In this document: positions 13,688-64,000 of the stretch, in pieces | Layout of the letters: every line of letters begins with the position of its first letter | How positions within the stretch are numbered: position 1 is the stretch's first letter | Source: Diplonema japonicum | Taxonomy: Eukaryota; Protista; Euglenozoa: Diplonemea | DNA length: 64,000 bases | NCBI GenBank assembly: GCA_964019335.1 | Contig: OZ025707.1 | Location: 310,001-374,000 of the forward strand | Direction: 5' to 3' | Position numbers and translations under genes: made by a program | Notes under the pieces: generated by a model | Told to the model about the DNA's origin: nothing | Database searches by the model: none | What the model saw: only the letters and a program-made list of their open reading frames with translations

Positions 13688-16600
13688 ATGATGGACTTCG
13701 TGTTCTTCAGGTGGGCAGGGGCACCGGAACCACAGGACGCCACACATGACGTGCCAGCCTTCCTCATGGAGCTGGGTGACTGGACGAAGCGTGCGAGGCG
13801 AGGTGCAATAGGAGAGTTCATTGAATGGTTCCAACTGAACGAGGTGAGGCTCTCGGCACTGCTCGACGTGAACCAACAGCCCGACCAGTGGGCGGGAATG
13901 CGGGAGTCCATTCTGGCCTCTGTGTGTGAGCTGCTGGAGCTACTGGTGCTACAAAAAGAAGGTAGCCCGAGCAACATACACCTGTACCGTGTGGTGGCCT
14001 CTTTGGTGGGACAGCTCGTCATACACGACAAGAGCTGCATTGCTGCTGATCAGCTGGTGGACTTCCGGCAGGTACTCGTAAACATGCTGAAAGACGAGGA
14101 GAAGCACAAGAAGCACCCTGAGTTCTTAGCATACCACACTATCATCACTGGTGGATGCGTCCTCGGGGAGAGTCCCCTTGGCGACCTTGCTGCTGTGGTG
14201 AAGGACATGACAGCTCTCATGACAACGTGGCCATCTGTTGAAAGCTTGTTCACTGGGACTGGGGAGGTGGGGGCACTGCGCAGTGCTGCAACACACAGCG
14301 TTCTTGTTCAGCGTCTGAAATACCTGCTTATGGCGGGCTTCATGTCTCACGGCCATGCGGGGAGCAAGAGAGATGCGGCAGAGCTCGAACGACTGGTCAA
14401 AGAGATCCACGATGTGGTGTGCCCTTCTGGGGAAAACGCTGAATGGGAGGTTCTCCCTGTGTCGCTGTGGGCGGGGACCCTTTCTGAGCTGTTGACATTC
14501 TCTCGTGTCGTGTCCTCGAAGGCAACCAACAAAGAGGGAGAATGTCGCCTTGTTCTCCACAACAACTGTGTTCTGTACCAAAGGATTCCTATGCTCGGGG
14601 AACGAGGGGCCATACAGTTTCCTGTGAATGTTAAGAAGGTGGTGGTTGGCTGCTTGGTGGGTCTTCTGAGGCACGGAAGGCTGACACCTGGTGCACTGAC
14701 AGAGTTGCTCAGGAAAAGTGAGACAACAGACAACAAGAAGGCTGTGGGCGCATTGCTGAAGACTGTGGGCGATGAGAAGGCTCAAGTAGTACGGCACAGG
14801 GCGGTATTTACCAGTTGTAAAGTGATTGAGAGTGGGTTTCTTGGCAGTGGGTTGTCAGACTGGATTACCTGCGAAGTACTGGACACAGTGAGGAGCGACG
14901 TGGAGGCACAGTCACTTGTTGAGCAAATGGAGACCTTCGAGCACACGAAGTACTATTTGAACATCACACTGAAGGAAAGATACATCAGTTACAAAGTCGA
15001 CAATGTGCACCTGTTGAAGGAGGTGACGAAACACCCAGACCAGTTGGGCATATTGCAAGCAATTGCAGAGAGGTACGAATGCAGCTTAGCTGTGCTTGCT
15101 GAAGCAATGGCACGGCAAAGCCCTTCGGCACCAGCCCCAATCGTGGGAAGAGCGCTCCACGAAACACAAGACTTCACAAAGGACACAATGTCATTCCTCA
15201 TGAACTTAGAAAATAGGGCGAAAGCAGCGGCACATTGCACAATGGCAAAGGAGAGACTTGCGAAGTTGCAAACCTTTGTGAAGTGGTTCAAGCTGAACGA
15301 AACAAAACTCGGGTCACTGGTTGAGGTTCAAGACACTAGCGAGCCTGCAGAACGTGTGCTGACCGCTGTGTGCGTGCTGCTGAAGGTGTTGCGGCAGTCA
15401 CTGGAGGACAGCGCACATTGCAAGGCGGGCGACACGGAGCACCTTGTAACCTTGAACAACATACACCTGTACCGTGTGGTGGCCACCTTGGTGTTGCAGC
15501 TCGTGACCTTCGGCAATGACAGCACTGCTTCGGATCAACTGCCAAACCTCCAGACTCTCGTCACAAGTTTGAAAGGAGAGAACAAAGCGTTCATGCACCC
15601 GGCATCGGCAGCGGACCACGAGGTCATCACCAAAGGGGGCGGCATACTCTCAAAAGCTTCTGTTTTGGGTGATCTTGTTTCCGTGGCAGGTGGTGCTTTA
15701 GCTGTCACGACATCGCAATTCAATTTGAAGGTAATGACTGCAGCCTGGCATGGGGTTGTGTCCTTATCTTCTAGATTCTTGTCCACAAGTGACGAACTTA
15801 AGATCGCAGCAACCTTCAACGCTCAATCTCAGCACCTGAAGCACCTGCTTCTGGTGAGGCCTCATGAAGCCACGGAGGCAGTACTTAACTTCGTTAACCT
15901 CGTGCACTCGGATATCTGCCCACAGAACAAGAGGAACTGGAAGGTGCTTCCTGCACAGCTGTGGGCAGGGACCCTTGCCGAGCTCCTTGTGTTCTCTCGT
16001 TTCGTGTCCTCTGAGCAAAGCAAGGAGGGGGAAGAAAAGTATATCCACAAAACTGGTGCCCTTTACCACAGGTTTCCTGTGTTGGGAGAAGACGAAGGAA
16101 TCATACAGTTCTCTCTCATTGCGAAAGACTGCATGGTGCAGTGCTTGATAGATCTTCTGAAACACGAACGCCAGCTGCCAAGTATGCTGCGGAAGTGTCT
16201 TCAACAGGCGACTGTGCTTCTGGGTGAAGTTCAGGAAAAGGCCAAAACGATCTTGAAAGATGAAGTGATAACAGAGGTGGGGAAGATGTTTAACGTGGTG
16301 AAGATCAAAGACTTGAAGAACATCAGAACTGAAGTGACTGATGCGGTGAAGGAACTGACGGCTGGAAAAGACAAACAAGAACAGGCTGATCCTGAAACCA
16401 ACGAACAGGTTGAAACTGAGGACACGTTGTATGGCGATGTGGGGATCAGCGACTTGGACGACATCGGCACTGGAGTGGTAAAGGGACTGACGGCTCTTTC
16501 TGGAATGGACGAGGGGACGACGGTACGGCACAGGGCAGTTCTTGCCTGCCTCGAAGTGATCGAGAGCAGGGTGCTGGACAACAGGATGTTGAAAACGATG

Positions 16601-19600
16601 AACAGCGAGGTGCTGAACACAATGAGGAGCGACAGAGAGAGAGAGCAATTGGAGAAGCAAGGACAGGTGTTCAAGAAGGCACAGCACTACCTGAGGATGA
16701 CACTACAGACGGAGGCGGAAAGTTACAAGAAGGACATGGAGGGGTTGATTGACGAGGTGGAGAGGCTTCTGGATCTGCGCGAGGTGGTTACCAGCAAAGA
16801 AGCTGTGCAGCACGTTGACGGGATACTGAAAGAGGCGCAGAAGGCTGTGAAGGTGTACGCAAGGAACCTTGAGGGGATGAACGCGATAGCAGGGACGACC
16901 CTGCTGCTCACGACAAGCATCTTCGAAAGGGTGACAGGGATCGACAAGCAGCTTCAGGACATGAAGAAGGAGGTGAGCGACATCCACACCTACCTCCAGC
17001 TGCACAGGAAGCTGAAGGAGAACATCGACCTCCTGCAACAAGCTCGTGTGGAGTCTTGCAGCAGCGACCTCCATGGGTGTGAGAGGTACTCGTTCATGCA
17101 GGTTGAGAAGGATGTCCCCGAAAATAGCGACGACAACCTTGAAAGTTTCAACCCCTTGGAATTTGCGACCCACTTGTTGAAGACCTGCTCTGCCGGGAGG
17201 AGCATTGTGTTCAAAGGCAGTTGTTGGGGTGCGGAGTTCCTGTCACTGCTGGAGAAGGAGCTATGGAACACCTATGATACTGATTTAAGAGAAAAAAAGA
17301 AAAATACCGCAGGAAGTACTACTCAAAGCAAAAAAAAAAAAAGCATTCTCCCCGTTCACGTGTTCCTGCCAAAGATGAAGAATCCGACGACACGCCTTGT
17401 GGAAGAGGCCCTGGAGGAGCAGCATGGGTTCACGAAGGGGAATGTGCAACGGCTTCAGGAAAAGACGAGGGCAAAGAAGGCACACCTGGCATTGATACTC
17501 GTGGGGTACTCGTTCCTCGACAAGGAGTTCCTTTTGGATTCCATGAGAGAGAAGAACAAGCTGAGTGAGTGGGGTGACCCCATCATCTTGGTGGAAGCAG
17601 ACACCACCATCCTGGAGTACACTGCGGACAAGCTGTTCGGACGCAACTCGAGTGTGTGCATGGATCACGTTGGTGCGAATGGTCCACCACCTCAGGGTGA
17701 GGGAACCTGTGAAGTGTACAGAATGAAGGAAATGAAGGACGAGGCCATCCAGAACATGATCGGCAGAGAGGAGGCTTCCATCGGGGCAGTGCTGAAGTGC
17801 GCTCTGCATTACAGAAAGTTCTCTACATTCATTGAAGTGAAAGAAGAACAGCACATGACATTCCGCATGCTTCGTGCCTTCATTCGTACCATTTGCAAGG
17901 AGGAGTTGTTGTATTATCGCAAGATTGACGGAAAATGGGAAAAGCGTCCCTTTTCAACCATACTCACAACATACCCCAATTCTGACAAAAGTACACTTCT
18001 GATGAAAACGATGTTGATGAAGATGGTAACAACAACTATGTGCGAATTGGAGGAAAAAGCATCACACAAGGAGGTGATGTGCGAGCTGGTGAAGCATATC
18101 ATGGAAAAGGTTCAAACCCACGGGGAGTTTACTATCCTTGATGAGCTGCATTCTTGCATGAAGGTGCATAAAGTTGAAAATGCATGGTCCGTCCGCCAGC
18201 TAACCGAAGAGATGAACATGGCCTTCTTGAGGACCTGCCTTGAGGAGTACCTCCGGCTGCCGTTGAGGTCACTGAGTACAAAGCACCCCTCCATCACCGA
18301 CGAGGAACTCGTGAAGCTTCTGATGGACTACAACTCGCGCCTCGCACTTGACATGACACGGGACCACGCGAGGCAGGCACCTTATGAGAACAGGTGTCGT
18401 GGCTTTCTGAGGGCACAGCGCACAGGAGGACACGATGTCGGCAAGCTGGACCAGCAGATGGTGCGGGACCTGTTTGCGGCCTCTCCTGTGGAGGTCTCGA
18501 GGGACCAAGACGGGAAGAAACAGGAGAGGGTGTACAGCTTCAGCTCCGAGTGGCAGCAGGAGATCTTCACCGCCATTGCTGTCCACGACAAGCTGATGAG
18601 GTTCCCTCTGAACCGTATCTGTACGAAGTTCTTTGTGAGTGTCTTTTCTCACACCTATGTCTGCAAGGATGACATAGCCGACCAGGCTGAGCAGGACGAG
18701 CACAGATGGGCACACTTCAGGGAGCAGAAAGACCTGATGGTGAGGAAGGTCAGAGAGGCAAATCCTGACTTCACCAAGGAGAAGGCCTCCAAGTATCTGG
18801 TTCTGGCGTGCAAAGCGGCGTGCGCTAGGGAGGCAACATGGGACGTGCTGATGGAAGATCTGATGAACTACCCTGGTGTGCTGAGGAACTACTTGGCGAA
18901 GATGGTGTTGAAGAAGAAAAGTTTAAACTCTGAGGATAAGCTGCTGATCTGGTTCAGGGACACACTGCTCTCGCTGGTGGAGCTGTCGAAGCTACCGTGG
19001 TGCAGCGCTCCTGCCGCCGTGGCGATCACGATCCTGTCGGCTGCGAACGACAGCTTTGCTGGGATGGACTTCAGAGGGATCCAAATACCGGGGGCGTCCC
19101 TTGAAGACAGCACCTTTGACAGGACAGACACTGCTGGTGTGGAGATGAAAGGAATAAACTTCATTCGGACCTACCTGCACGACGGCAAGGACAGCATCAA
19201 AAGTTCCCTGACGAAGGGCCTCCTTTCATTTGCGGCCTTCACTGATGACAAGGGCAAGGATACTGTTGCAGAGGTGTATGCGGACAAGGTGTTGTTCAGT
19301 GGGAAGGAAGTAAAACTGCCGGAAGAGATAATGAACCTGAAGAATCCGAAGATCCTGAGCAAGATAGTGCAAAGGGGGAAACACTGTGTTCTTGTCGTTG
19401 CTTACGAAGTGGACGCAATTGCTGAGTGTCAACAGGAAGAGGTTTCTGTGGAGGTGGTGAGCTCGCCGATGGAACTTATGTTCATTGCAGACGACAGTAA
19501 AGTGTGGTGTGTGAATCGAGGTGAAGGGGGAATCGTGAGGGAGGACGGGAGGGAGGAGCATAAAGTTCTATGCGAACCTGTGTTAGTGAAATGTGATGAA

Positions 19601-20727
19601 AAAGTGAGGATGGAGTTAGCACCAGTTGTGGAGAGGCTCACACCAGTTGGGGTGGATAGGTTCCTCACTTTGAACAGGAATGAAGATGGACTGTCGTGGG
19701 AGTGCATTGTGTACAGTGCAAAAGAGACAAAAATGGACAAAGAAAACTATCGCTTCCCGATCCCCGCAAGCAAAGAAGGACCACTGCGACATGTGGTGTG
19801 TGGCGATACGCTGCTCGTGCAGGGAGGGGACAAAGACAGCAACTGGCTGCTGAAGGAGGACAAGGCAGTGCGTCTGTACACAAAGAGCTTTTTTGACGAG
19901 GAGCGAAAGAGGTTGAAACTTCTCAATGTTTACGCTTCTGCGGCGCGTACTTACTACCACCTTGAGGGCGACTTGTTGGTGGAAATGGAGCCCCCGAAGA
20001 GAGAATTAGTCCTGGGTGGCCCTGTGTTTGAGATAACTGTCTCGGGTGACGGCAGGGTTGGGACGTTGGTGCGGTGTGGGGACACCAAGATAGATGTTGT
20101 AACGTACTGCAGGGGGAGGAACACTGTGAGCCGTCTCAAGGAGCCGGTGGACATGAACTTGGCTGAGATCAAGTGGGACTACCGTAAACAAGTGTTCAAG
20201 GTGAGGTCTGAGGGCAACGAAAAGGGGGGAGGGAAATGGTATAGAGCAGAAGAACTAGGCCCTGAGATGATAGTGTTGGTGGAAACAAGCCCGTTGGGAA
20301 ATGATGATGTAGACCCCCCTGCTGTCCTGTCCTGTCCGGATCAAGAATACAAAGAGGGAACCGAGACCTGCGATCAGCTGGTGTACGAGGACACCAACCC
20401 CCCTGCAGATGATGTTGCCACCATAAGACACAGTTCACACCAGGCATGGATAGAGAGGCCGCCACAGCAGTTGCAGGCACTCGTGGTGAAGACAGGTGAC
20501 GTGACGAAAGTTCTTCTGAAGGCAGACTTTATAAACACAGTTCAGTTACTTAAGAACAACCTTGTCGCCGTTGTTGGCGGGAACGTGTACTTCTGGGGCT
20601 GGAAGTGCAGCATCAATGCTCAGTACGGCTACACACCAGCAGGGTCCACAGGTGAGTGGTACGTGAACAAGCAGCTCACTGATACCAACATCGTGAAGGT
20701 CATGTCATGTATGCATTGCAATCAGAA

Positions 20728-20763
<36 letters not shown>

Positions 20764-21277
20764 CGGAGTAGAAGGTAACGAGAAGGCAGATGAACTCGCC
20801 GAGCAAGGTAGGGATAAGGAAGCGACGCAGGGGATAAGCCTGAACGCGGCGAAGAACTACCTGCAGAAGACGACGAAGGCGGAGATAAGAGCAGGACTCG
20901 ATAAAAATCGAGAATACAACAAGTGGACGAAGGGGAGAGAGGCACCGAAGCGGATGGAAGGGCTCAGCAGACGCGAAGAAGTAAACCAGCTAAAGACTGG
21001 TCATCACCACCTGCTCAAAGAGGAGTACGCAACCCAACGCACCTGCGAAAAATGCGACGGCACAACACAGAGAACACTACAACACCTCCTCCTAGAGTGC
21101 CCAGCGACCAAGGCGGCCAGAGACAAGCACTACGACTCCTCATCCTCATCAAAGACGCGAAGAGGGCAATCAGGTTCCTCGAGGACACCGAAGAGACAAC
21201 CTACAAGCCCACTGGCAAGCCCCCCGACGAGCCCACCGACTAACCCCCACCGACTAGCCGTATACCTAGCAAGCTAA
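13688..21277 (+). CDS. Giant NLR-like protein copy 1 (2x helical domain, degenerate NACHT, pentapeptide repeats, beta-rich C-terminus); native sequence ends about 20728, remainder is LINE insert
   Basis: LPVHVFLPKMKNP, LALILVGYS, YSFSSEWQQEIFTA and AAVAITILSAANDSFAGMDFRGIQIPGASL match, in order and spacing, NACHT-pentapeptide-WD40 proteins. Paralogues at 49257 and 58746. Confidence 0.75.
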
Positions 21278-27142: not shown

Positions 27143-27177
<35 letters not shown>

Positions 27178-31945: not shown

Positions 31946-32289
31946 CAACCGACTATTCGCAGGGCACATGAAGTTACAACTCCCTCGTTATGAGAGACTG
32001 GCGTCTACCAGCTACTGGGCTACTCACAGGTATGGTGAAAGTTGAACATGGCGGGGGGGTTGTGATACCTTTGGTCTCGGCCAGGGGAAATTGTATGCGA
32101 GCCGGTGTCCCAGGAGCGCTCCGGAGCATCTGCTGCTCATGTTGGTGGCGAATGTGGTTGTTTCACCTTAGTGGTTTTTTCCTTTGTTACCAGGGTTTTT
32201 TCTGAAACTCGAGCTTATGACAAATTACGTATTTATTGTATTTCACTCTTTTCCTTCTCAAAAAGACACTGCCCCCTCAGGAAGAGCAC

Positions 32290-49086: not shown

Positions 49087-49256
49087 ACCCCCACCCCCCT
49101 AAGGGTGGTCCTCGAGTGGGATTTGCCCTTAAACATCGCCTTTTCTTTATGTTCTTCCGAAAGCGGGAATTTCCGAGCCAGATCTTATGTTTTGAGTTTT
49201 ATTTTCGTATCTTATAAACACCACTTATTCCCCTCTCGAACCACACACAGGACAGG

Positions 49257-52200: not shown

Positions 52201-55200
52201 GACAGGTGTTCAAGAAGGCACAGCACTACCTGAGGATGACACTACAGACAGAGGCGGAAAGTTACAAGAAGGACATGGAGGGGTTGCTTGGGAAGGTGGA
52301 GAGGCTTCTGGAGCTCCGCAAGGTGGTTACCAGCGAGGAAGCTGTGCGGCACGTTGACGGGATACTGAAAGAGGCGCAGAAGGCTGTGAAGGTGTACGCA
52401 AGGAACCTTGAGGGGATGAACGCGATAGCTGGGGCGACCCTGCTGCTCACGACAAGCATCTCCGAAAGGGTGACAGGGATCGACAAGCAGCTTCAGGACA
52501 TGAAGAAGGAGGTGAGCGACATCCACAAATACCTCCAGCTGCACAGGGAGCTGAACGAGGACATCAGCCTCCTGCGACAAGCTCGTGTGGAGTCTTGCAA
52601 CAGCGACCTCCATGGGTGTGAGAGGTACTCGTACATGCAGGTTGAGAAGGTCCCCAAGAATAGTGACGACAACCTTGAAAGTTTCGACCCCACGGAATTT
52701 GCGGCCCACTTGTTGAAGCCCTGCTCTGCCGGGAGGAGCATTGTGTTCAAAGGCAGTTGTTGGGGTGCGGAGTTCTTGTCACTGGTGGAGGAGAAGCTAT
52801 GGAGCACCTACACCAACGACGATACTCAAAGCCTTCTCCCTGTTCACGTGTTCCTGCCAAAGATAAATAATCCGACGACACGCCTTGTGGAAGAGGCCCT
52901 GGAGGAGCAGCATGGGTTCACGAAGAGGAATGTGGAACGGCTTCAGGAAAAGACGAGGGTACAGAAGGCACACCTGGCACTGATACTCGTGGGGTACTCG
53001 TTCCTCGACAAGGAGTTCCTTTTGGATTCCATGAGAGAGAAGAGCAAGCTGAGTGAGTGGGGTGACCCCATCATCTTGGTGGAAGCAGACACCACCATCC
53101 TGGAGTACACTGCGGACAAGCTGTTCGGACGCAACTCGAGTGTGTGCATGGATCACGTTGGTGCGAATGGTAAAAAAAAAAAAAAAAATGGTCCACCACC
53201 TCAGGGTGAGGGAAATTTAAAGAAAACCTGTGAAGTGTACAGAATGAAGGAAATGAAGGACGAAGCCATCCAGAACATAATCGGCAGAGAGGAGGCTTCC
53301 ATCGGGGCAGTGCTGAAGTGCGCTCTGCATTACAGAAGGTTCTCTACATTCATTGAAGTGAAAGAAGAACAGCACATGACATTCCGCATGCTTCGTGCCT
53401 TCATTCGTACCATTTGCAATGAGGAGTGGGGGTTGTATGATCGCAAGATTGACGGAAAATGGCAAAAGCGTCCCTTTTCAACCATACTTACAAGTTTCCC
53501 CAGTTCTGACAAAAGTACGCTTCTGATGAAAACTATGTTGACGAAGATGGGGGAGGAAAAGGTGGAGGAAAAGGTGATGTGCGGGTGGGTGAGGTATATC
53601 ATGGAAAAGGTTCAAACCCACGGGGTGTTCACTATCCTTGATGATCTGAATACTGGTATGAATGATGAAGATGAAGATGCAAGGTCCGTCTATCGTCTAA
53701 CCAAAGAGATGAACATGGCCTTCTTGAGGACCTGCCTTGAGGAGTACCTCCGGCTGCCGTTGAGGTCACTGAGTACAAAGCACCCCTCCATCACCGACAA
53801 GGAACTCGTGAAGCTTCTGATGGACTACAACTCGCGCCTCGCACTTGACATGACACGGGACCACACGAGGCAGGCACCTTATGAGGACAGATGCCATGGC
53901 TTTCTGAGGGCACAGCACACAGGAGGGCACGATGTCGGCAAGCTGGACCAGCAGATGGTGCGGGACCTGTTTGCAGCCTCTCCTGTGGAGGTCTCGAGGG
54001 ACCAAGACGGGAAGAAACAGGAGAGGGTGTACAGCTTCAGCTCCGAGTGGCTGCAGGAGATCTTCACCGCCATTGCTGTCCATGACAAGCTGATGAGGTT
54101 CCCTCTGAACCGTATCTGTACGAAGTTCTTTGTGAGTGTCTTTTCTCACACCTATGTCTGCAAGGATGACACAGCCGACCAGGCTGAGCAGGACGAGCAC
54201 AGATGGGCACACTTCAGGAAGCAGAAAGACCTGATGGTGAGGAAGGTCAGAGAGGCAAAACCTGATTTCACCAAGGAGAAGGCCTCCAAGTACCTGGTTC
54301 TGGCGTGCAAGGCGGCGTGCGCTAGGACGGCAACATGGGACGTGCTGATGGAAGATCTGATGAACTACCCTGGTGTGCTGAGGAACTACTTGGCGAAGAT
54401 GGTGTTGAAGAAGAAAAGTTTAAACTCTGAGGATAAGCTGCTGATCTGGTTCAGGGACACACTGCTCTCGCTGGTGGAGCTGTCGAAGCTGCCGTGGTGC
54501 GATGCTCCTGCCGCCGTGGCGATCACGATCCTGTCGGCTGCGAACGAAAGCTTTGCTGGGATGGACTTCAGAGGGATCCGAATACCGGGGGCGTCCCTTG
54601 AAGACAGCACCTTTGACAGGACAGACACTGATGGTGTGGAGATGAAAGGAATCATTCGGACCTACCTGCACGGCAAGGACAAAATCAAAAGTTCCCTGAG
54701 GAAGGGCCTCCTTTCATTTGCGGCCTTCACTGATGACAAGGGCAAGGATACTGTTGCAGAGGTGTATGCGGACAAGGTGTTGTTCAGTAGGAAAGAAGTA
54801 AAACTGCCGGAAGAGATAATGAACCTGAAGAATCCGAAGATCCTGAGCAAGATAGTGCAAAGGGGAAAACAGTGTGTTCTTGTCGTTGCTTACGAAGTGG
54901 ACGGGGTTGTGACAATCGCTGAGTGTCAACAGGAAGAGGTTTCTGTGGAGGTGGTGAGCACGCCGATGGAACTTATGTTCATTGCAGACGACAGTAAAGT
55001 GTGGTGTGTGAATCGAGGTGAAGGGGGAATCGTGAGGGACGCAAAGGCAACGACAGGGGCTCAAGTTGGAGAGGAAGGGGGGAAGGAGCATAAAGTTCAA
55101 TGCGAACCTGTGTTAGTGAATAAAAAAAGTGATGAAAAAGTGAGGATGGAGTTAGCACAAGTTGTGGAGGGGCTCACACCAGTTGGGGTGGACAGGTTCC

Positions 55201-56354
55201 TCACTTTGAACAGGAGTGCAGATGGACTGTCGTGGGAGTGCATTGTGTACAGTGTAAAAAAGACAAAAATGGACAAGGAAAACTATCGCTTCCCGATCCC
55301 CGCAAGCAAAGAAGAAGGACCACTGCGACATGTGGTGTGTGGCGACACGCTGCTCGTGCTGGGAGGGGACAAGGACAGCAACTGGCTGCTGAAGGAGGAC
55401 AAGGCAGTGCGTCTGTACACAAAGAGCTTTTTTGACGAAAAGGAGCGAAAGAGGTTGAAACTTCTCAATGTTTACGCTTCTGCGGCGCGTACGTACTACC
55501 ACCTTGAGGGCGACTTGTTGGTGGAAATGGAGCCCCCAAAGGGGGAGTTAGTACTGGGTGGCCCTGTGTTTGAGATAGCTATCTCGGGTAAAGGCAAGGT
55601 TGGGACGTTGGTGCGGTGTGGGGACACCAAGATAGATGTTGTAACGTACTGCAAGGGGAGGAACACTGTGAGCCGTCTCAAGGAGCCGGTGGAGATGAGC
55701 TTGGCTGAGATCAAGTGGGACAACCATCAAAAAGTGTTCAAGGTGAGGTCTGACAAAAAAGAACAAGAAGAAGAAAAATGGTATAGAGCAGAAGAACTAG
55801 GCCCTGAGATGATAGTGTTGGTGAAAACAAGCCCGTCGGGAAATGATGATGTAGACCCCCCTGCTGTCCTGTCCTGTCCGGATCAAGAATACAAAGAGAG
55901 AACCCAGACCTGCGATCAGCTGGTGTACGAGGACACCAACCCCCCTGCAGATGATGTTGCCACCATACGTAACGGTCCACACCAGGCATGGATAGAGAGG
56001 CCGCCACAGCAGCAGCAGCAGGCACTCGTGGTGAAGACAGGTGACGTGACGAAAGTTCTTCTGAAGGCAGACTTTATAAACACAGTTCAGTTACTTTACG
56101 ACAACCTTGTCGCCGTTGTTGGCGGGAACGTGTACTTCTGGGGCTGGAAGTGCAGCATCAATGCTCAGTACGGTTACACACCAGCAGGGTCCACAGGTGA
56201 GTGGTACGTGAACAAGCAGCTCACTGATACCAACATCGTGAAGGTCGCAGCACCATGTCATGTATGCATTGCAATCAGAAATGAGAACAACACCTATTCA
56301 GGAGGAGGTACAGGCGAGAACCAATCAGCCGAGCCGTGCAAACCGAACCAATAG
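49257..56354 (+). CDS. Giant NLR-like protein copy 2 (intact, 2365 aa)
   Basis: Full-length paralogue of 13688 with the same 5' flank (49152-49256 matches 13583-13687) and a native C-terminus. Confidence 0.8.
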   Translation: MMDLVFFKWAGAPEPRDATHDVPAFLEELGDWTKRVRRDAIGEFIEWFQLNEVRLSALLDVNQQPDQWAGMRESILASVCVLLELLVLLQIEGSPSNIHLYRVVASLVGQLVIHDKSCIAADQLVDFQKLVNRLKDEEKHKKHPEFLAYHTIITGGCVLGVSPFGDLAAVVKDMTAFTTTRPSVEGLFTGTGEVEALRSAATHSVLVQRLKYLLMAGFMSHGHAGSEGDAAELEQLVKEIHDVVCPSGENAEWKVLPVSLWAGTLSELLTFSRVVSSKATNKEGECRLVLHNNCVLYQRIPMLGERGAIQFPVNVKKVVVGCLVCLLRHGRLTPGALTELLRKSETTDNKKAVGALLKPVSDEKAQVVRHRAVFTSYEVIESGFLGSGLSDWITCEVLDTVRSDVEAQSLVEQMETFEHTKYYLNITLKERYDSFKKDNEHLLNEVTNHPDQFGILQAIAERYECSLAVLAEAMARPIPPAPAPIVLHGTQHFTKDIMSFLMNLENRAKAAAQCTVAKERPAKLQTFVKWFKLNETKLGSLVEVQDISKPIERVLTAVCVLLKVLQQSLEDSAHCEAGDTEHVTLNNIHLYRVVATLVLQLVTFDTGCTASDQLSKFQTLATSLSKGENKAFMHPASAADHEVITKGGDILSKASVWYDSFSVAAGAFAFATSHFNLIVMSAAWRGAVSLSSRLKGILFPSDELKIAAIFNAQSQHLKHLLLVRPHEATEAVHEFVDLVHSDICPQNKRNWKVLPAQLWAGTLAELLVFSRVVSSEQSKEEGEEKYIHKTGALYHRFPVLGEDKGLIQFSLIAKGRMVQCLIDLLKYERQLPSVLQEGLRQATELLSDVQEKAKTILKDEVITEVRKMFDVKKIEDLKKIETKVKKLMAGKDIQEQVETEEPDMFLGDVEIGDLEVIGTGVVRELALSGINEGTMVRHRAVLACLEVIESRVLDDRMLKTMNSEVLNTMRSDREREQLEKQGQVFKKAQHYLRMTLQTEAESYKKDMEGLLGKVERLLELRKVVTSEEAVRHVDGILKEAQKAVKVYARNLEGMNAIAGATLLLTTSISERVTGIDKQLQDMKKEVSDIHKYLQLHRELNEDISLLRQARVESCNSDLHGCERYSYMQVEKVPKNSDDNLESFDPTEFAAHLLKPCSAGRSIVFKGSCWGAEFLSLVEEKLWSTYTNDDTQSLLPVHVFLPKINNPTTRLVEEALEEQHGFTKRNVERLQEKTRVQKAHLALILVGYSFLDKEFLLDSMREKSKLSEWGDPIILVEADTTILEYTADKLFGRNSSVCMDHVGANGKKKKKNGPPPQGEGNLKKTCEVYRMKEMKDEAIQNIIGREEASIGAVLKCALHYRRFSTFIEVKEEQHMTFRMLRAFIRTICNEEWGLYDRKIDGKWQKRPFSTILTSFPSSDKSTLLMKTMLTKMGEEKVEEKVMCGWVRYIMEKVQTHGVFTILDDLNTGMNDEDEDARSVYRLTKEMNMAFLRTCLEEYLRLPLRSLSTKHPSITDKELVKLLMDYNSRLALDMTRDHTRQAPYEDRCHGFLRAQHTGGHDVGKLDQQMVRDLFAASPVEVSRDQDGKKQERVYSFSSEWLQEIFTAIAVHDKLMRFPLNRICTKFFVSVFSHTYVCKDDTADQAEQDEHRWAHFRKQKDLMVRKVREAKPDFTKEKASKYLVLACKAACARTATWDVLMEDLMNYPGVLRNYLAKMVLKKKSLNSEDKLLIWFRDTLLSLVELSKLPWCDAPAAVAITILSAANESFAGMDFRGIRIPGASLEDSTFDRTDTDGVEMKGIIRTYLHGKDKIKSSLRKGLLSFAAFTDDKGKDTVAEVYADKVLFSRKEVKLPEEIMNLKNPKILSKIVQRGKQCVLVVAYEVDGVVTIAECQQEEVSVEVVSTPMELMFIADDSKVWCVNRGEGGIVRDAKATTGAQVGEEGGKEHKVQCEPVLVNKKSDEKVRMELAQVVEGLTPVGVDRFLTLNRSADGLSWECIVYSVKKTKMDKENYRFPIPASKEEGPLRHVVCGDTLLVLGGDKDSNWLLKEDKAVRLYTKSFFDEKERKRLKLLNVYASAARTYYHLEGDLLVEMEPPKGELVLGGPVFEIAISGKGKVGTLVRCGDTKIDVVTYCKGRNTVSRLKEPVEMSLAEIKWDNHQKVFKVRSDKKEQEEEKWYRAEELGPEMIVLVKTSPSGNDDVDPPAVLSCPDQEYKERTQTCDQLVYEDTNPPADDVATIRNGPHQAWIERPPQQQQQALVVKTGDVTKVLLKADFINTVQLLYDNLVAVVGGNVYFWGWKCSINAQYGYTPAGSTGEWYVNKQLTDTNIVKVAAPCHVCIAIRNENNTYSGGGTGENQSAEPCKPNQ

Positions 56355-58478: not shown

Positions 58479-58748
58479 CAGAAGGCCAGTTTTTGCATCA
58501 GAGAAAACCAAAGGACCTTAAGAAACTGGGCAGGCGGAAGTGGCAAGAAGAAAGAGTAGATACTTTGAGAAAGGCAGCACGGCCGAAAAAGGAGGAAGGC
58601 CGAAGCCCCAAAAGGGAGAAAGGGTAGATAAGTAGAGACAAGGGGGACGTTCCAAAACAGGAACCTCCTTTATCTCATCTCTTTTCTTTTCTTTTCACCA
58701 TTCTTAATCAATTCAGCTATATGCACAATAAAACAACAACAAAGTATG
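58479..58748 (+). promoter_or_regulatory. Dispersed leader cassette with putative trans-splice acceptor and start context
   Basis: cagaaggccagtttttgcat..ggacgttccaaaacaggaacctcc(t)tatctcatctc..ttaatca(c/a)ttcag..caacaaagtATG. Also at 24485-24748 and 41492-41751, split at 8010-8143/8601-8700, 3' part at 10918-11071. Confidence 0.6.
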
Positions 58749-61700
58749 TATTCAAGCTCCAGTGGCAGCGAACAGCCCTCATCCGGGTATGAAGAACCGC
58801 TCCCAGCCGGCAGCAGCGAAGTGCCCTCATCTGGGTATGAAGAACCGCTCCCAGCCGGCAGCAGCGAAGTGCCCTCATCTGGGTATGAAGAACCGCTCCC
58901 AGCCGGCAGCAGCGAAGTGCCCTCATCTGGGTATGAAGAACCGCTCCCAGCCGGCAGCAGCGAAGTGCCCTCATCTGGGTATGAAGAACCGCTCCCAGCC
59001 GGCAGCAGCGAAGTGCCCTCATCCGGGTATGAAGAACCGCTCCCAACCACCACCGCTCCTTCAACCACCAGTAGCAGCGAAGTGCCCACATCCGCTACAT
59101 ATGACGTGCCAGCCTTCCTCAGGGAGCTGGGTGACTGGACGAAGCGTGTGAGGCGAGGTGCAATAGGAGAATTCATTGAATGGTTCCAACTGAACGAGGT
59201 GAGACTCTCGGCACTGCTCGACGTGAACGAACAGCCCGACCAGTGGGCCCCCCTGGAGGCAATGCGGGAGTCCATACTGGCCTCTGTGTGTGAGCTGCTG
59301 AAGGTGCTACTAAGAGAAGGTAGCTCGACGCACATTGCCATGAACAACATACATCTGTATCGTGTGGTGGCCTCTTTGGTGGGACAGCTCGTCATACACG
59401 ACAAGAGCTGCATTGCTGCTGATCAGCTGGTGGACTTCCGGGTACTCGTAAACATGCTGAAAGACGAGAAGCAGCACAAGAAGCACCCTGAGTTCTTAGC
59501 ATACCACACTATCATCACTGGTGGATGCGTCCTCGGGGTGAGTCCCTTTGGCGACCTTGCTGCTGTGGTGAAGGCCATGACAGCTTTCATGACAACGTGG
59601 CCCTCTGTTGAAGGTTTGTTCACTGGGACTGGGGAGGCGGGGGCACTGCGCAGTGCTGCAACACACAGCGTTCTTGTTCAGCGCCTGAAGTACCTGCTTA
59701 TGGCGGGCTTCATGTCTCACGGCCATGCGGGGAGCAAGAGAGATGCGGCAAAGCTCGAACAACTGGTCAAAGAGATCCACGATGTGGTGTGCCCTTCTGG
59801 GGAAAACGCTGAATGGGAGGTTCTCCCTGTGTCGCTGTGGGCGGGGACCCTTTCTGAGCTGTTAACATTCTCTCGTGTCGTGTCCTCGAAGGCAACCAAC
59901 AAAGAGGGAGAATGTCGCCTTGTTCTCCACAACAACTGTGTTCTGTACCAAAGGATTCCTATGCTCGGGGAACGAGGGGCCATACAGTTTCCTGTGAATG
60001 TTAAGGAAGTGGTGGTTGGCTGCTTGGTGGATCTTCTGAGGCACGGAAGGCTGACACCTGGTGCACTGACAGAGTTGCTCAAGAAAAGGGAGACGACAGC
60101 CAACAAGAAGGCTGTGGGCGCATTGCTGAAGACTGTGGGCGATGAGAAGGCTCAAGTAGTACGGCACAGGGCGGTATTTACCAGTTATGAAGTGATTGAG
60201 AGTGGGTTTCTTGGCAGTGGGTTGTCAGATAGGATTGCCTGCGAAGTACTGGACACAGTGAGGAGCGACGTGGAGGCACAGTCACTAGTTGAGCAGATGG
60301 AGACCTTCGAGCACACGAAGTACTATTTGAACATCACACTGAAGGAAAGATATATCAGTTACAAAGTCGACAATGAACACCTGTTGAATGAGGTGACGAA
60401 CCACCCAGACCAGTTTGGCATATTGCAAGCAATTGCAGAGAGGTACAAATGCAGCTTAGCTGTGCTTACTGTGCTTGCTGAAGCAATGGCACGGCCAATA
60501 CCCCCGGCACCAGCCCCAATCTGCTTCAGAACACAAGACTTCACAAAGGACATCATGTCATTCCTCATGAACTTGGAAAATAGGGCGAAAGCAGCGGCAC
60601 AGTGCACAATGGCAAAGGAGAGACCTGCGAAGTTGCAAACCTTTGTGAAGTGGTTCAAGCTGAACGAAATAAAACTCGGGTCACTGGTTGAGGTTCAGGA
60701 CATCAGCAAGCTTACAGAGGGTGTGCTGACCGCTGTGTGCGTGCTGCTGAAGGTGCTGCAGCAGTCACTGGAGGACAATGCACATTGCGAGGCTGAGGAG
60801 CACCTTGTAACCTTGAACAACATACACCTGTACCGTGTGGTGGCCACCTTGGTGTTGCAGCTCGTGACCTTCGACACTGGTTGCACTGCTTCGGATCAAT
60901 TGTCGAAATTACGGACTCTCGTCACAAGTTTGAGCAAAGGAGAGAACAAAGCGTTTATGCACCCGGCATCGGCAGCGGACCACGAGGTCATCACCAAAGG
61001 GGGCGACATTCTCTCAAAGACTTCTGTTTGGTATGATTCCTTTTCCTTGGCAGCTGGTGCTTTAGCTACATCGCACTTCAATTTGACCGTAATGACTAAA
61101 GGGGGCGGCATTCTCTCAAAAGCTTCTGTTTGGGGTGATCTTGTTTCCACATCGCACTTCAATTTGGAGGTAATGACTGCAGCCTGGCATTGGATTACGT
61201 CCTTATCCTCCAGACTCAAAGGCTCCTTGTTGTCCACAAGTGACGAACTTAAGATCGCAGCAATCTTCAACTCTCAATCTCAGCACCTGAAGCACCTGCT
61301 TCTGGTGAGGCCTCATGAAGCCACGGAGGCAGTACATGAGTTCGTTGACCTCGTGCACTCGGATATCTGCCCACAGAACAAGAGGAACTGGAAAGTGCTT
61401 CCTGCACAGCTGTGGGCAGGGACCCTTGCCGAGCTACTGGTGTTCTCTCGCGTCGTGTCCTCTGAGCAAAGCAAGGAGGAGGGGGAAGAAAAGTATATCC
61501 ACAAAACTGGTGCCCTTTACCACAGGTTTCCTGTGTTGGGAGAAGACGAGGGAATCATACAGTTCTCTCCCATAGCGAAAGGCCGTATGGTGCAGTGCTT
61601 GATAGATCTTCTGAAATACGAACGCCAGCTGCCAAGTATGCTGATGAAGTGTCTTCGACAGGCGACTGTTCTTTTGAGTGATGTTCAGGAAAAGGCCAAA

Positions 61701-64000
61701 ACGATCTTGAAAGATGAAGTGATAACAGAGGTGGGGAAGATGTTTGACGTGAAGAAAATCAGAGACTTGAAGAACATCAAAACTGAAGTGGCTGATGCGG
61801 TGAAGGGACTGACGGCTGGAAAAGACAAACAGGAACTGGAACAGGCTGATCACAAGGGGACGATGGTACGGCACAGGGCAGTCCTTGCCTGCCTCGAAGT
61901 GATCGAGAGCAGGGTGCTGGACGACAGGATGTTGAAAACGATGAACAGCGAGGTGCTGAACACAATGAGGAGCGACAGAGAGAGAGAGCAATTGGAGAAG
62001 CAAGGACAGGTGTTCAAGAAGGCACAGCACTACCTGAGGATAACACTACAGACGGAGGCGGAAAGTTACAAGAAGGACATGGAGGGGTTGATTGACAAGA
62101 TGGAGAAGCTTCTGGAGCTCCGCAAGGTGGTTACCAGCAAGGAAGCTGTGCGGCACGTTGACGGGATACTGAAAGAGGCGCAGAAGGCAGTGAAGGTGTA
62201 CGCAAGGAACCTTGAGGGGATGAACGCGATAGCTGGGGCGACCCTGCTGCTCACGACAAGCATCTCCGAAAGGGTGACAGGGATCGACAAGCAGCTTCAG
62301 GACATGAAGAAGGAGGTGAGCGACATCCACAAATACCTCCAGCTGCACAGGAAGCTGAAGGAGAACATCAGCCTCCTGCAACAAGCTCGTGTGGAGTCTT
62401 GCAGCAGCGACCTCCATGGGTGTGAGAGGTACTCGTTCATGCAGGTTGAGAAGGATGTCCCCAAGAATAGTGACGACAACCTTGAAAGGAAAGAGAATAC
62501 CCATGTCACAGAAGGTGCTAGAACAATTGCTCAGGCCGACACGAAAGCACGAACGTCTCACCACACTTCCGTTAGCTCCACTAAAGGATTTAAAAAAAAA
62601 AAAGAAAAAGGTTTCAACCCCTTGGAATTTGCAACCCACTTGTTGAAGCCCTGCTCTGCCGGGAGGAGCATTATATTCGAGGGCTGTTGTTGGGGTACGG
62701 AGTTCCTGTCACTGGTGGAGAAGGAGCTATGGAGCACCTACACCTATGACGATACTCAAAGCCTTCTCCCTATTCACGTGTTCCTGCGAAAGATGAAGAA
62801 TCCGACGACACGCCTTGTGGAAGAGGCCCTGGAGGAGCAGCATGGGTTCACGCCGAGGAATGTGGAACGGCTTCAGGAGAAGACGAGGGCAAAGAAGGCA
62901 CACCTGGCACTGATACTCGTGGGGTACTCGTTCCTCGACAAGGAGTTCCTTTTGGATTCCATGAGAGAGAAGAGCAAGCTGAGTGAGTGGGGTGACCCCA
63001 TCATCTTGGTGGAAGCAGACACCACCATCCTGGAGTACACTGCGGACAAGCTTCAGGGTGAGGGAAATTTAAAGGAAGCCTTTGAAGTGTACAGAATGAA
63101 GGAAATGAAGGACGAGGCCATCCAGAACATAATCGGCAGAGAGGAGGCTTCCATCGGGGCAGTGCTGAAGTGCGCTCTGCATTACAGAAGGTTCTCTACA
63201 TTCATTGAAGTGAAAGAAGAACAGCACATGACATTCCGCATGCTTCGTGCCTTCATTCGTACCATTTGCAATGAAAAATGGGGGTTGTATTATCGCTGGA
63301 TTGACAAGAAATGGCAAAAGCGTCCTTATTCAACCATACTCACAACATACCCCAGTTCTGACAAAAGTACGCTTCTGATGAAAACGATGTTGACTCAGAT
63401 GGTACCAAAAACTACGAGCGAAGTGGAGGAAAAGGCATCACACAAGGATGTGATGTGCGGGTGGGTGAAGTATATCATGGAAAAGGTTCAAACCGACGGG
63501 GTGTTCACTATCCTTGATGATCTGCATACTGGCATGATGGATGAAGATGAAGATGCACGGTCCGTCTACCATCTAACCAAAGAGATGAACATGGCCTTCT
63601 TGAGGACCTGCCTTGAGGAGTACCTCCGGCTGCCGTTGAGGTCGCTGAGTACAAAGCACCCCTCCATCACCGACAAGGAACTCGTGAAGCTTCTGATGGA
63701 CTACAACTCGCGCCTCGCACTTGACATGACACGGGACCACGCGAGGCAGGCACCTTATGAGAACAGGTGTCGTGGCTTTCTGAGGGCACAGCACACAGGA
63801 GGGCACGATGTCGGCAAGCTGGACCAGCAGATGGTGCGGGACCTGTTTGCGGCCTCTCCGGTGGAGGTCTCGAGGGACCAAGACGGGAAGAAACAGGAGA
63901 GGGTGTACAGCTTCAGCTCCGAGTGGCTGCAGGAGATCTTCACCGCCATTGCTGTCCACGACAAGCTGATGAGGTTCCCTCTGAACCGTATCTGTACGAA
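58746..64000 (+). CDS. Giant NLR-like protein copy 3 (runs off window) with swapped repeat N-terminus
   Basis: ATG 58746 MYSSSSGSEQ..; joins the family sequence at ATYDVPAFL (about 59095). No stop-terminated ORF in this frame in the track, consistent with an open frame to 64000. Confidence 0.8.
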   Translation, partial: MYSSSSGSEQPSSGYEEPLPAGSSEVPSSGYEEPLPAGSSEVPSSGYEEPLPAGSSEVPSSGYEEPLPAGSSEVPSSGYEEPLPAGSSEVPSSGYEEPLPTTTAPSTTSSSEVPTSATYDVPAFLRELGDWTKRVRRGAIGEFIEWFQLNEVRLSALLDVNEQPDQWAPLEAMRESILASVCELLKVLLREGSSTHIAMNNIHLYRVVASLVGQLVIHDKSCIAADQLVDFRVLVNMLKDEKQHKKHPEFLAYHTIITGGCVLGVSPFGDLAAVVKAMTAFMTTWPSVEGLFTGTGEAGALRSAATHSVLVQRLKYLLMAGFMSHGHAGSKRDAAKLEQLVKEIHDVVCPSGENAEWEVLPVSLWAGTLSELLTFSRVVSSKATNKEGECRLVLHNNCVLYQRIPMLGERGAIQFPVNVKEVVVGCLVDLLRHGRLTPGALTELLKKRETTANKKAVGALLKTVGDEKAQVVRHRAVFTSYEVIESGFLGSGLSDRIACEVLDTVRSDVEAQSLVEQMETFEHTKYYLNITLKERYISYKVDNEHLLNEVTNHPDQFGILQAIAERYKCSLAVLTVLAEAMARPIPPAPAPICFRTQDFTKDIMSFLMNLENRAKAAAQCTMAKERPAKLQTFVKWFKLNEIKLGSLVEVQDISKLTEGVLTAVCVLLKVLQQSLEDNAHCEAEEHLVTLNNIHLYRVVATLVLQLVTFDTGCTASDQLSKLRTLVTSLSKGENKAFMHPASAADHEVITKGGDILSKTSVWYDSFSLAAGALATSHFNLTVMTKGGGILSKASVWGDLVSTSHFNLEVMTAAWHWITSLSSRLKGSLLSTSDELKIAAIFNSQSQHLKHLLLVRPHEATEAVHEFVDLVHSDICPQNKRNWKVLPAQLWAGTLAELLVFSRVVSSEQSKEEGEEKYIHKTGALYHRFPVLGEDEGIIQFSPIAKGRMVQCLIDLLKYERQLPSMLMKCLRQATVLLSDVQEKAKTILKDEVITEVGKMFDVKKIRDLKNIKTEVADAVKGLTAGKDKQELEQADHKGTMVRHRAVLACLEVIESRVLDDRMLKTMNSEVLNTMRSDREREQLEKQGQVFKKAQHYLRITLQTEAESYKKDMEGLIDKMEKLLELRKVVTSKEAVRHVDGILKEAQKAVKVYARNLEGMNAIAGATLLLTTSISERVTGIDKQLQDMKKEVSDIHKYLQLHRKLKENISLLQQARVESCSSDLHGCERYSFMQVEKDVPKNSDDNLERKENTHVTEGARTIAQADTKARTSHHTSVSSTKGFKKKKEKGFNPLEFATHLLKPCSAGRSIIFEGCCWGTEFLSLVEKELWSTYTYDDTQSLLPIHVFLRKMKNPTTRLVEEALEEQHGFTPRNVERLQEKTRAKKAHLALILVGYSFLDKEFLLDSMREKSKLSEWGDPIILVEADTTILEYTADKLQGEGNLKEAFEVYRMKEMKDEAIQNIIGREEASIGAVLKCALHYRRFSTFIEVKEEQHMTFRMLRAFIRTICNEKWGLYYRWIDKKWQKRPYSTILTTYPSSDKSTLLMKTMLTQMVPKTTSEVEEKASHKDVMCGWVKYIMEKVQTDGVFTILDDLHTGMMDEDEDARSVYHLTKEMNMAFLRTCLEEYLRLPLRSLSTKHPSITDKELVKLLMDYNSRLALDMTRDHARQAPYENRCRGFLRAQHTGGHDVGKLDQQMVRDLFAASPVEVSRDQDGKKQERVYSFSSEWLQEIFTAIAVHDKLMRFPLNRICT
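58785..59045 (+). repeat. 48-bp coding tandem repeat, 5 full units + partial (GYEEPLPAGSSEVPSS)
   Basis: Units start 58785, 58833, 58881, 58929, 58977, 59025. Confidence 0.95.

What the first reader, a model, noticed from the sequence alone, without database searches (positions are those of the whole stretch)
13688..64000. Expanded family of giant NLR-like proteins with an apparently catalytically dead NACHT domain
Seen: three large paralogues (13688, 49257, 58746) plus a fragment (12625). Known: NACHT-pentapeptide-WD40 proteins (Mortierellaceae fungi, ciliates, some endosymbiotic bacteria) have G-x-x-G-x-GKS, PLFI-x-LP, hhhhDGYDE, Y-x-F-x-H and AANAITIL..F-x-GADLRGIRIPGA in that order. Here the order is retained, but Walker A reads FKGSCWGAEF or FEGCCWGTEF (no Lys; 17201-17240), Walker B reads LILVGYSF (no Asp; 17486-17515) and the winged-helix His is lost, in all three copies. 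Inference: a pseudo-ATPase STAND receptor or scaffold family, a candidate undescribed protist immune or recognition system.
Basis: partly seen in the sequence, partly recalled or inferred. Interest (0 to 1): 0.85.

Follow-up and report, generated by a model that had tools for sequence, protein, structure and literature searches.

The report
Expanded dead-NACHT NLR-like gene family
The marine protist Diplonema japonicum carries at least eleven intact, transcribed genes for giant NLR-like proteins whose NACHT "switch" domain has lost every nucleotide-binding motif, so a whole receptor-like family seems to work without the ATP switch that such proteins normally depend on.

Summary
The window (Diplonema japonicum, contig C60) has three paralogous intronless ORFs of 2,365 to about 2,550 aa and one frameshifted fragment. 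Genome-wide there are 11 intact copies on five contigs.

Pfam does not recognise them. A profile built only from these copies still finds hundreds of NACHT-pentapeptide-WD40 proteins. Of 152 matched NACHT cores, 148 carry GxxxxGK[ST]. Three canonical paralogues in the same genome align column for column.

At those columns all 11 copies lack four motifs:
- the Walker A Lys-Ser/Thr;
- the Walker B Asp;
- the sensor-1 Arg;
- the winged-helix His.

The dead clade is monophyletic and old, since synonymous sites are saturated between its subclades. It is under purifying selection (dN/dS 0.42-0.48). It has no stop codon, whereas neutral drift would give 11 or more per copy. It is also present in a Trinity transcriptome.

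The C-terminus is beta-propeller-like only in a weak model. The duplicated N-terminal module has no known relative.

Function is inferred, not shown: a nucleotide-independent STAND scaffold or sensor, analogous to P-loop-less plant NLRs such as rice Pb1. I class it as a new variant of a known kind. The scan had noted canonical NACHT-WD40 genes elsewhere in this genome, but not this dead family.

The parts
13688..21277 (+). ORF1, dead-NACHT paralogue (2,529 aa). The family-conserved part ends near 20703. The tail 20704-21277 reads through an A36 run into a retroelement fragment.
17210..17239 (+). ORF1 Walker A site, FKGSCWGAEF (no Lys-Ser/Thr)
17492..17515 (+). ORF1 Walker B site, LILVGYSF (Asp replaced by Val)
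17579..17602 (+). ORF1 sensor-1 site, PIILVEAD (Arg lost; live copies read V(T/S)(S/C)R)
18530..18553 (+). ORF1 winged-helix site, VYSFSSEW (His lost; live copies read Y-x-F-I-H)
19013..19081 (+). ORF1 junction and pentapeptide motif, AAVAITILSAAN..FAGMDFRGI. This is the stretch best conserved with live NACHT-pentapeptide proteins.
49257..56354 (+). ORF2, dead-NACHT paralogue (2,365 aa), the reference copy for all analyses
49371..50294 (+). ORF2 N-terminal module, copy A (family-specific, no known relative)
50820..51788 (+). ORF2 N-terminal module, copy B (43% identical to copy A)
52626..54731 (+). ORF2 NACHT module (NBD, helical and winged-helix parts) up to the pentapeptide junction. Walker A site 52746-52775, Walker B site 52980-53003, sensor-1 site 53067-53090, WH site 54027-54050, junction 54510-54578.
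54693..56354 (+). ORF2 C-terminal all-beta region. Propeller-like in a low-confidence model; no sequence match to WD40.
58746..64000 (+). ORF3, dead-NACHT paralogue, cut by the window end (the open frame continues 2,383 bases past the window end, to C60:376383). Different N-terminal leader with six 15-aa repeats. Walker A site 62676-62705, Walker B site 62910-62933, sensor-1 site 62997-63020, WH site 63903-63926.
12619..13465 (+). Frameshifted fragment of a fourth copy (residues about 239-543, N-terminal modules), followed by an A-rich run

Best explanation
These genes descend from NACHT-pentapeptide-beta-propeller STAND NTPases and have become pseudo-NTPases. One ancestral gene in the Diplonema japonicum lineage lost the Walker A Lys-Ser/Thr, the Walker B Asp, the sensor-1 Arg and the winged-helix His. 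It kept the structural core of the NACHT module and the junction into the pentapeptide repeats. It carries a family-specific, tandemly duplicated N-terminal module and a strongly diverged beta-rich C-terminus. It then expanded by tandem duplication to at least 11 intact genes on five contigs. These steps are shown by homology, motif state, tree, selection and transcripts. The next step is inferred. The proteins cannot use ADP/ATP exchange as a switch, so they most likely act as nucleotide-independent scaffolds or sensors. The C-terminal domain would bind a ligand. The conserved NACHT, winged-helix and junction core would serve as a fixed oligomerisation or docking platform, either alone or together with the canonical paralogues. 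The N-terminal modules would be the output. The birth-and-death pattern, with ankyrin genes interleaved, fits a recognition or conflict role.
For: Homology:
- BLASTP of the ORF2 centre against a Pfam-positive NACHT paralogue gives E 1e-25 and 2e-7.
- A dead-clade-only profile finds 789 proteins in 1.84 billion.
- A 150-aa core HMM built from dead copies only matches 149 of the 150 best hits. Of 152 matched cores, 148 have GxxxxGK[ST] and 149 have hhhD[GASE].

Motif loss: all four motifs are absent in all 11 copies and present in the live paralogues and outside relatives.

Fold: the VIA-align top rows are nearly all NLRs. The best is NLRC4 with Z 9.8, 147 residues, rmsd 4.9. The NBD part matches ORC/AAA+ at Z about 6.5.

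Single origin: the dead clade has SH-aLRT 100 and a stem of 1.73 changes per site. It sits next to the D. japonicum live clade.

Selection:
- Deep pairs give dN/dS 0.42-0.48 (95% CI below 0.55). The NACHT module alone gives 0.39-0.42.
- The live clade gives 0.25-0.37.
- No copy has a stop codon. Random substitution at 4% of sites already gives 11 stops on average, and 0 of 300 trials had none.

Transcription: EukProt Trinity proteins P0002 and P0151 match the C91 group (P0002 98.8% to one C91 copy; P0151 is an isoform of the same Trinity gene, not compared to the genome). P0001 is a mosaic of exact 30-aa stretches unique to ORF1, ORF2 and ORF3. P0155 and P0156 cover the 5' ends.

Census: 11 intact copies and 2 fragments, against 5 loci that pass Pfam NACHT.
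Against: - Pfam gives no NACHT, Pentapeptide or WD40 hit on the window proteins.
- Both structure models are poor (pLDDT 54.6 and 45.5). Foldseek found no match at E <= 0.001.
- Among recent duplicates dN/dS is 0.7-0.9, and about 1 in the NACHT module, so the youngest copies may be under relaxed constraint.
- Nothing here measures nucleotide binding. One copy (C62) reads WGKEF at the P-loop site.
- No evidence bears on ligand, partners or phenotype.
- No dead copy lies next to a live copy.
- Transcript evidence is an assembled transcriptome only. Diplonemids transcribe long polycistrons (my background knowledge, not tested here), so transcription alone is weak evidence of function.
Confidence: 0.75

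Rival explanations
1. The NACHT domain still binds or hydrolyses a nucleotide through non-canonical residues, as WNK kinases place their catalytic lysine elsewhere. On this reading the family is an unusual active STAND, not a pseudo-enzyme.
For: The strand and helix pattern of the NBD is kept. Helix alpha-1 after the P-loop site (EFLSLVEKELW) is nearly invariant. C62 has a Lys at the P-loop site (WGKEF). The module is under purifying selection.
Against: Four separate nucleotide-contacting motifs are lost together in all 11 copies. No Lys or Arg is invariant in the NBD of the dead clade: the invariant columns are hydrophobic residues, Gly, Pro, Glu, Ser, Thr, Asn and Trp. The residue before the conserved Gly varies among K, N, E and D.
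Confidence: 0.1
2. The family is decaying. The genes are recent, transcribed but functionless duplicates of a broken NLR gene, spread by segmental duplication and retroelement activity.
For: Recent pairs give dN/dS 0.7-0.9. There are frameshifted fragments at 12619-13465 and at C81:274276-274871. The ORF1 tail is replaced by retroelement sequence. Retroelement ends flank the genes.
Against: Eleven ORFs of 1,790-3,000 aa have no stop, although synonymous divergence runs from 0.03 to saturation. Neutral drift at 4% would give about 11 stops per copy. Deep pairs have dN/dS 0.42-0.48 with confidence intervals far below 1.
Confidence: 0.08
3. The central region is not NACHT-derived, and the motif order is a chance or convergent resemblance.
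For: No Pfam hit. No PDB NLR hit by sequence profile. Foldseek E >= 0.02.
Against: BLASTP E 1e-25 and 2e-7 to a Pfam-positive paralogue. The dead-only core HMM hits NACHT cores at up to 74 bits. The alignment is column-exact over about 700 residues. The structural neighbours are NLRs.
Confidence: 0.02

Closest known systems
NACHT-pentapeptide-WD40 STAND NTPases (Mortierellaceae such as Modicella, Linnemannia and Mortierella; Candidatus Neptunochlamydia; Cymbomonas; Pelomyxa; and the D. japonicum paralogues on C103 and C95)
   Same: Same order of NACHT NBD, helical and winged-helix region, the junction motif LSLVELSKLP..A..I(T/S)IL and pentapeptide turns, then a beta-rich C-terminus. Homology is significant over about 700 residues.
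   Different: All four nucleotide motifs are lost. The C-terminus is no longer recognisable as WD40 (hhalign probability 0.4%). Only two or three pentapeptide turns remain and Pfam does not detect them. There is a new, duplicated N-terminal module of about 310-450 aa with no relative outside this species.
P-loop-less or P-loop-independent plant NLRs (rice Pb1; the ADR1 family), as reviewed in PMC3782705
   Same: An NLR-type protein that works without a conventional nucleotide-binding motif. [quoted passage not shown] This is the best functional analogy.
   Different: Those proteins have NB-ARC domains and LRRs, not NACHT, pentapeptide and propeller. They are single genes inside large canonical repertoires. 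Here a whole old clade is dead and it outnumbers the detectable canonical NACHT genes (11 against 5 loci). This is an analogy only, not membership.
Animal NLRs (NLRC4, NAIP5, NLRP3, NLRP7, NLRP9, NOD2)
   Same: They are the best structural neighbours of the model, over the winged-helix and HD2 part (Z 8-9.8) and, more loosely, over the whole NACHT module.
   Different: Sequence identity is only 11-20%. They have LRR sensors and CARD, PYD or BIR effector domains, and intact Walker motifs.

Membership tests
NACHT domain (Pfam PF05729) | Match to the Pfam model above its gathering score (26.7 bits) | tested here: not met
   ORF1 and ORF2 give no hit at E <= 0.1, and neither do C62 and C96. The live paralogues score 33.4 and 28.9 bits.
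NACHT domain (homology) | Significant sequence homology of the NBD core to proteins with an accepted NACHT domain | tested here: met
   BLASTP E 2e-7 over the NBD and 1e-25 over the WH-to-junction part. The dead-only 150-aa core HMM hits 149 of 150 proteins, with single-domain scores up to 74 bits.
STAND/NACHT NTPase (activity) | Walker A GxxxxGK[ST] | tested here: not met
   All 11 copies read xGxxWG(A/T/R/K)(E/G)F or xGxxxGCEEF at the aligned columns. 148 of 152 outside cores have the motif.
STAND/NACHT NTPase (activity) | Walker B hhhhD[GAS]xDE | tested here: not met
   LILVGYSF in 8 copies and LILEGYS(H/Q) in the 3 C91 copies, against LDSY(N/D)E or LDGYDE in live and outside proteins.
STAND/NACHT NTPase (activity) | Sensor-1 Arg at the end of strand beta-4 | tested here: not met
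   LVEAD, LVAAD or LVSAN, against (T/S)(S/C)R in live and outside proteins.
STAND/NACHT NTPase (activity) | Winged-helix His that contacts ADP | tested here: not met
   F-S-S, F-T-S, F-Y-N, F-M-Y, F-V-D or F-L-D, against F-I-H, F-T-H or F-M-H in the live paralogues and in P0004 and P0010.
STAND/NACHT NTPase (fold) | NBD, helical domain, winged helix and HD2 fold | tested here: inconclusive
   The AF2 model has pLDDT 54.6 (80-90 over the WH part). The strand and helix order of a P-loop NBD is present. VIA-align top rows are nearly all NLRs (Z up to 9.8), but Foldseek gives E >= 0.02.
NACHT-pentapeptide-WD40 architecture | Pentapeptide repeats directly after the NACHT module | tested here: met
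   The junction and first turns are the best conserved stretch shared with live paralogues. A profile that includes live copies matches pentapeptide proteins in the PDB at E 1.5e-6. Pfam PF00805 alone does not reach threshold on the dead copies.
NACHT-pentapeptide-WD40 architecture | C-terminal WD40 beta-propeller | tested here: inconclusive
   No WD40 Pfam hit (one weak WD40_RLD hit at E 0.014). hhalign against the live WD40 region gives probability 0.4%. The dead C-terminal HMM finds no WD40 region in 150 relatives, with one exception. The low-confidence model is all-beta and its top 50 neighbours are almost all propellers, Z 8-10.6.
Sensor/helper-type P-loop-independent NLR | Function depends on a partner NLR with an intact P-loop | not testable with these tools
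   Live paralogues exist but none lies next to a dead copy. There are no interaction data.

The most novel reading that the evidence does not exclude
A nucleotide-independent NLR-like system. An old clade of pseudo-NACHT proteins would act as pre-formed, ligand-gated scaffolds whose novel duplicated N-terminal modules are a new kind of output domain. It would form the main intracellular recognition repertoire of a protist that lives with bacterial endosymbionts, for example for surveillance of symbionts or viruses. That would show that STAND receptors can give up the ATP switch altogether.
Probability: 0.2. Interest if true: 0.8.

Novelty: new variant of a known kind. Interest (0 to 1): 0.58.

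Why it matters
STAND and NLR receptors are understood as ADP/ATP-driven switches. Single P-loop-less NLRs are known in plants. Here an entire multigene clade has lost all four nucleotide motifs and has kept giant ORFs under selection through long divergence. It also outnumbers the detectable canonical NACHT genes of its genome. That makes a concrete question testable: what does the NACHT scaffold do when the switch is gone? It also gives the first described NLR-like repertoire of a diplonemid, one of the most abundant groups of marine heterotrophs. A full-text search found no paper that links diplonemids with NACHT, and the genome note is unannotated. Finally, it shows that standard domain annotation would miss this family completely.

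Tried and rejected
- Pfam on the window proteins found nothing useful.
- A sequence profile against the PDB found only pentapeptide proteins and no NLR. The C-terminal and N-module profiles found nothing.
- ESM Atlas on the N-module and on the pre-NACHT region gave no usable hit.
- The search for homologous proteins on the centre and on the N-module returned only D. japonicum transcripts.
- A metagenome scan with the dead-clade alignment matched 186 patterns, none of them a relative.
- Sequencing runs: no RNA run is on record. The four runs I laid are contigs, and three look like DNA assemblies (longest records 26-102 kb). They say nothing about transcription.
- hhalign of the dead C-terminus against the live WD40 region showed no similarity.
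Because of this, the C86 stand-alone N-module ORFs and the canonical NACHT loci on C56, C102 and C77 were not read.
- I rejected the idea that dead and live genes are genetically paired, because they lie on different contigs.
Full report
**What is in the window.** The window is G000:C60:310001-374000.

It holds two complete + strand ORFs without internal stops, 13688-21277 (2,529 aa) and 49257-56354 (2,365 aa). A third starts at 58746 and runs off the end. Its open frame continues to C60:376383 (2,584 codons). In the central 700 residues the three are 89-91% identical.

A frameshifted piece of a fourth copy lies at 12619-13465. It corresponds to residues about 239-543.

- FKGSCWGAEF at 17210-17239 (ORF1);
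- LILVGYSF at 17492-17515 (ORF1);
- FEGCCWGTEF at 62676-62705 (ORF3).

**Organism.** A Trinity transcript protein from the EukProt set EP01064, Diplonema japonicum (P0003), is 99.8% identical over 2,481 residues to a paralogue on contig C103. The genome size of 62.5 Mb fits the published D. japonicum YPF1604 assembly (62.30 Mb, PMC13598402). That paper gives no gene annotation and does not mention NACHT. Earlier scan notes had already named a diplonemid. I checked this independently.

**Is it NACHT?** Pfam finds nothing on the window proteins. A six-frame search of the genome itself found paralogues at falling identity:
- C81, three copies, 71-79%;
- C96, 53%;
- C62, 50%;
- C91, three copies, 42-45%;
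- C103 (two copies) and C95, 25-29%.

The two C103 proteins pass Pfam NACHT (33.4 and 28.9 bits, cut-off 26.7). They also carry Pentapeptide and WD40 domains, and one has an OTU domain. C95 falls just short of the NACHT cut-off.

BLASTP of the ORF2 centre against the C103 protein gives E 1e-25 (26% identity over 428 residues, winged helix to pentapeptide) and E 2e-7 (strand beta-2 to Walker B).

A profile built from the 11 dead copies alone was run against 1.84 billion representative proteins. It found 789 proteins at E <= 0.001. Only four scored below 1e-30: two D. japonicum transcripts of the dead clade, the live D. japonicum paralogue, and one metagenome protein that groups with the canonical proteins in BLAST and the tree and has intact motifs.

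A 150-residue HMM of the NBD core, again from dead copies only, matched 149 of the 150 best hits. Of 152 matched cores, 148 have GxxxxGK[ST] and 149 have hhhD[GASE], mostly LDGYDE.

The hits with names that I looked up come from Mortierellaceae (Modicella, Linnemannia, Mortierella), Candidatus Neptunochlamydia, Cymbomonas and Pelomyxa. Ciliates were not checked.

**Motif state.** At the aligned columns:

| Motif | Live and outside proteins | The 11 dead copies |
|---|---|---|
| Walker A | G-x4-GK[ST] | FKGSCWGAEF, FNGSYWGAEF, CDGTCWGRGF, FGMHWGKEF, FDGNQSGCEEF |
| Walker B | hhhhD(G/S)Y(D/N)E | LILVGYSF (8 copies), LILEGYS(H/Q) (3 C91 copies) |
| Sensor 1 | (T/S)(S/C)R | VEAD, VAAD, VSAN |
| Winged-helix | F-x-H | F-S-S, F-T-S, F-Y-N, F-M-Y, F-V-D, F-L-D |

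So four independent nucleotide-contacting motifs are gone in every copy. The hydrophobic strand pattern, helix alpha-1 (EFLSLVEKELW), LLPVHVFLPK, SEWGDP and the junction LSLVELSKLP..AAVAITILSAAN..F(A/S)GMD(F/L)RGI are kept.

**Fold.**
- *Central region.* With only 14 sequences in the alignment, the AlphaFold2 model of the central 702 residues is poor (mean pLDDT 54.6). It is 80-90 over the winged-helix part. It shows the strand, helix, strand order of a P-loop NBD. Foldseek gave no match at E <= 0.001, although nine of its first ten rows are NLRs. VIA-align on Foldseek's candidates gave Z 9.8 for NLRC4 (147 residues, rmsd 4.9). About 24 of the first 26 rows are NLRs or NLRP-containing complexes (NLRC4, NAIP5, NLRP1, NLRP3, NLRP7, NLRP9, NOD2). 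The NBD part matched ORC and other AAA+ proteins at Z about 6.5. I read this as consistent support, not proof.
- *C-terminal region.* The model of the C-terminal 628 residues is worse (pLDDT 45.5), but it is all-beta. In a search that does not lean on Foldseek, nearly all of its 50 best neighbours are beta-propellers, with Z 8-10.6. By sequence the C-terminus has no detectable link to WD40.

**N-terminus.** Residues 1 to about 950 are two tandem copies of a module of about 310-450 aa (43% identity between copies). C62 appears to have an extra copy. In the genome the module occurs only in this family and in two stand-alone ORFs on C86. It has no relative in Pfam, the PDB, the ESM Atlas or the 5.8-billion-protein set, apart from D. 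japonicum transcripts.

**Evolution.** In a maximum-likelihood tree of 59 NACHT-to-junction segments, the 11 dead copies form one group (SH-aLRT 100) on a stem of 1.73 changes per site. They lie beside the D. japonicum live clade and two metagenome proteins (set support 98). One loss event therefore suffices.

Selection estimates:

| Comparison | dN/dS |
|---|---|
| Dead clade, deep pairs, whole length | 0.42-0.48 (bootstrap 95% CI 0.37-0.54) |
| Dead clade, deep pairs, NACHT module only | 0.39-0.42 |
| Live clade, whole length | 0.25-0.37 |
| Live clade, NACHT module only | 0.15-0.30 |
| Dead clade, recent duplicates | 0.7-0.9 |
| Dead clade, recent duplicates, NACHT module only | CI includes 1 |

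Synonymous sites between the dead subclades are saturated.

None of the 11 ORFs has a stop. Random substitution of 4% of sites in ORF2 gives 11 stops on average, and 0 of 300 trials had none. The dead state is therefore old and the proteins are maintained by selection. The pattern of young tandem copies, fragments and uneven divergence along the genes is typical of birth-and-death families.

**Transcription.** No RNA run could be used. The listed runs are contigs, and the three best holders look like DNA assemblies. The EukProt Trinity transcriptome does contain the family:
- P0002 is 98.8% identical to one C91 copy. P0151, another isoform of the same Trinity gene, hits the ORF2 centre equally well.
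- P0001 is a mosaic of exact 30-residue stretches that are unique to ORF1, ORF2 or ORF3. This is what an assembler makes from reads of close paralogues.
- P0155 and P0156 cover the 5' ends.

The caveat is that this is an assembled transcriptome.

**Surroundings.** Ankyrin-repeat genes lie between the copies, at 24671, 28108 and 32236. A polycystin-type channel gene and a TSP1-domain gene lie upstream. An ankyrin ORF also sits inside the C91 cluster. Retroelement ends flank ORF2 and replace the ORF1 tail.

**Mechanism.** What is shown: a NACHT-derived family without nucleotide motifs, selected and transcribed. What is inferred: since ADP/ATP exchange cannot gate these proteins, they most likely act as nucleotide-independent scaffolds or sensors. 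The diverged beta-rich C-terminus would be the binding part and the new N-terminal modules the output. They might work together with the canonical paralogues.

The nearest functional precedent is the P-loop-less rice NLR Pb1 and other P-loop-independent plant NLRs (PMC3782705). That is an analogy, not membership.

Rival readings and my probabilities:
- non-canonical nucleotide binding, 0.1;
- decay, 0.08;
- no NACHT ancestry, 0.02.

**Verdict.** Observation confirmed. Interpretation supported as to ancestry and motif loss. The immune or recognition role is unproven. This is a new variant of a known kind.

Noticed in passing
window 20704-21277: After the conserved ...NIVKV, the ORF1 tail is replaced by a short insert, an A36 run (20728-20763) and an in-frame fragment of a non-LTR retroelement (RNase H motif GNEKADELA, zinc-knuckle end). 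The ORF therefore reads about 190 foreign residues before its stop.
   Followed up: partly
window 58746-59050; also 24791-25099 and 41603-42183: ORF3 begins with six 15-aa repeats (SGYEEPLPAGSSEVP) instead of the MMDxVFF leader of ORF1 and ORF2. The same S/E/P-rich cassette is found at the N-terminus of an ankyrin gene and in an ORF at 41.6-42.2 kb, so it looks like a shared leader cassette.
   Followed up: partly
window 24671-25951, 28108-29889, 32236-33684; C91:72537-76619: Ankyrin-repeat genes are interleaved with the dead-NACHT genes on C60 and also on C91. One (32236) has a weak ubiquitin-like N-terminus.
   Followed up: partly
window 49102-49148 (and 48400-49200): Very high contig depth in DNA runs, with many different flanks joining at 49102 and 49148. 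This looks like the 3' end of an abundant repeated element directly upstream of ORF2.
   Followed up: no
G000:C86:410591-412817: Two stand-alone ORFs (479 and 495 aa) carry only the family's N-terminal module, at 26-30% identity.
   Followed up: no
L030:3102-9998 (C103:71101-78561): The canonical NACHT-pentapeptide-WD40 paralogue has an OTU cysteine-protease domain (Pfam 28.4 bits) about 100 residues upstream of its NACHT domain.
   Followed up: no
window 13580-13687 and 49150-49256: ORF1 and ORF2 share about 120 nearly identical bases upstream of the ATG, so the duplication unit includes the 5' flank. ORF3 has a different upstream sequence.
   Followed up: no
window 12-1841 and 8718-10553: Upstream neighbours are a polycystin-type cation channel gene and a secreted or membrane protein with a thrombospondin type 1 domain.
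   Followed up: no
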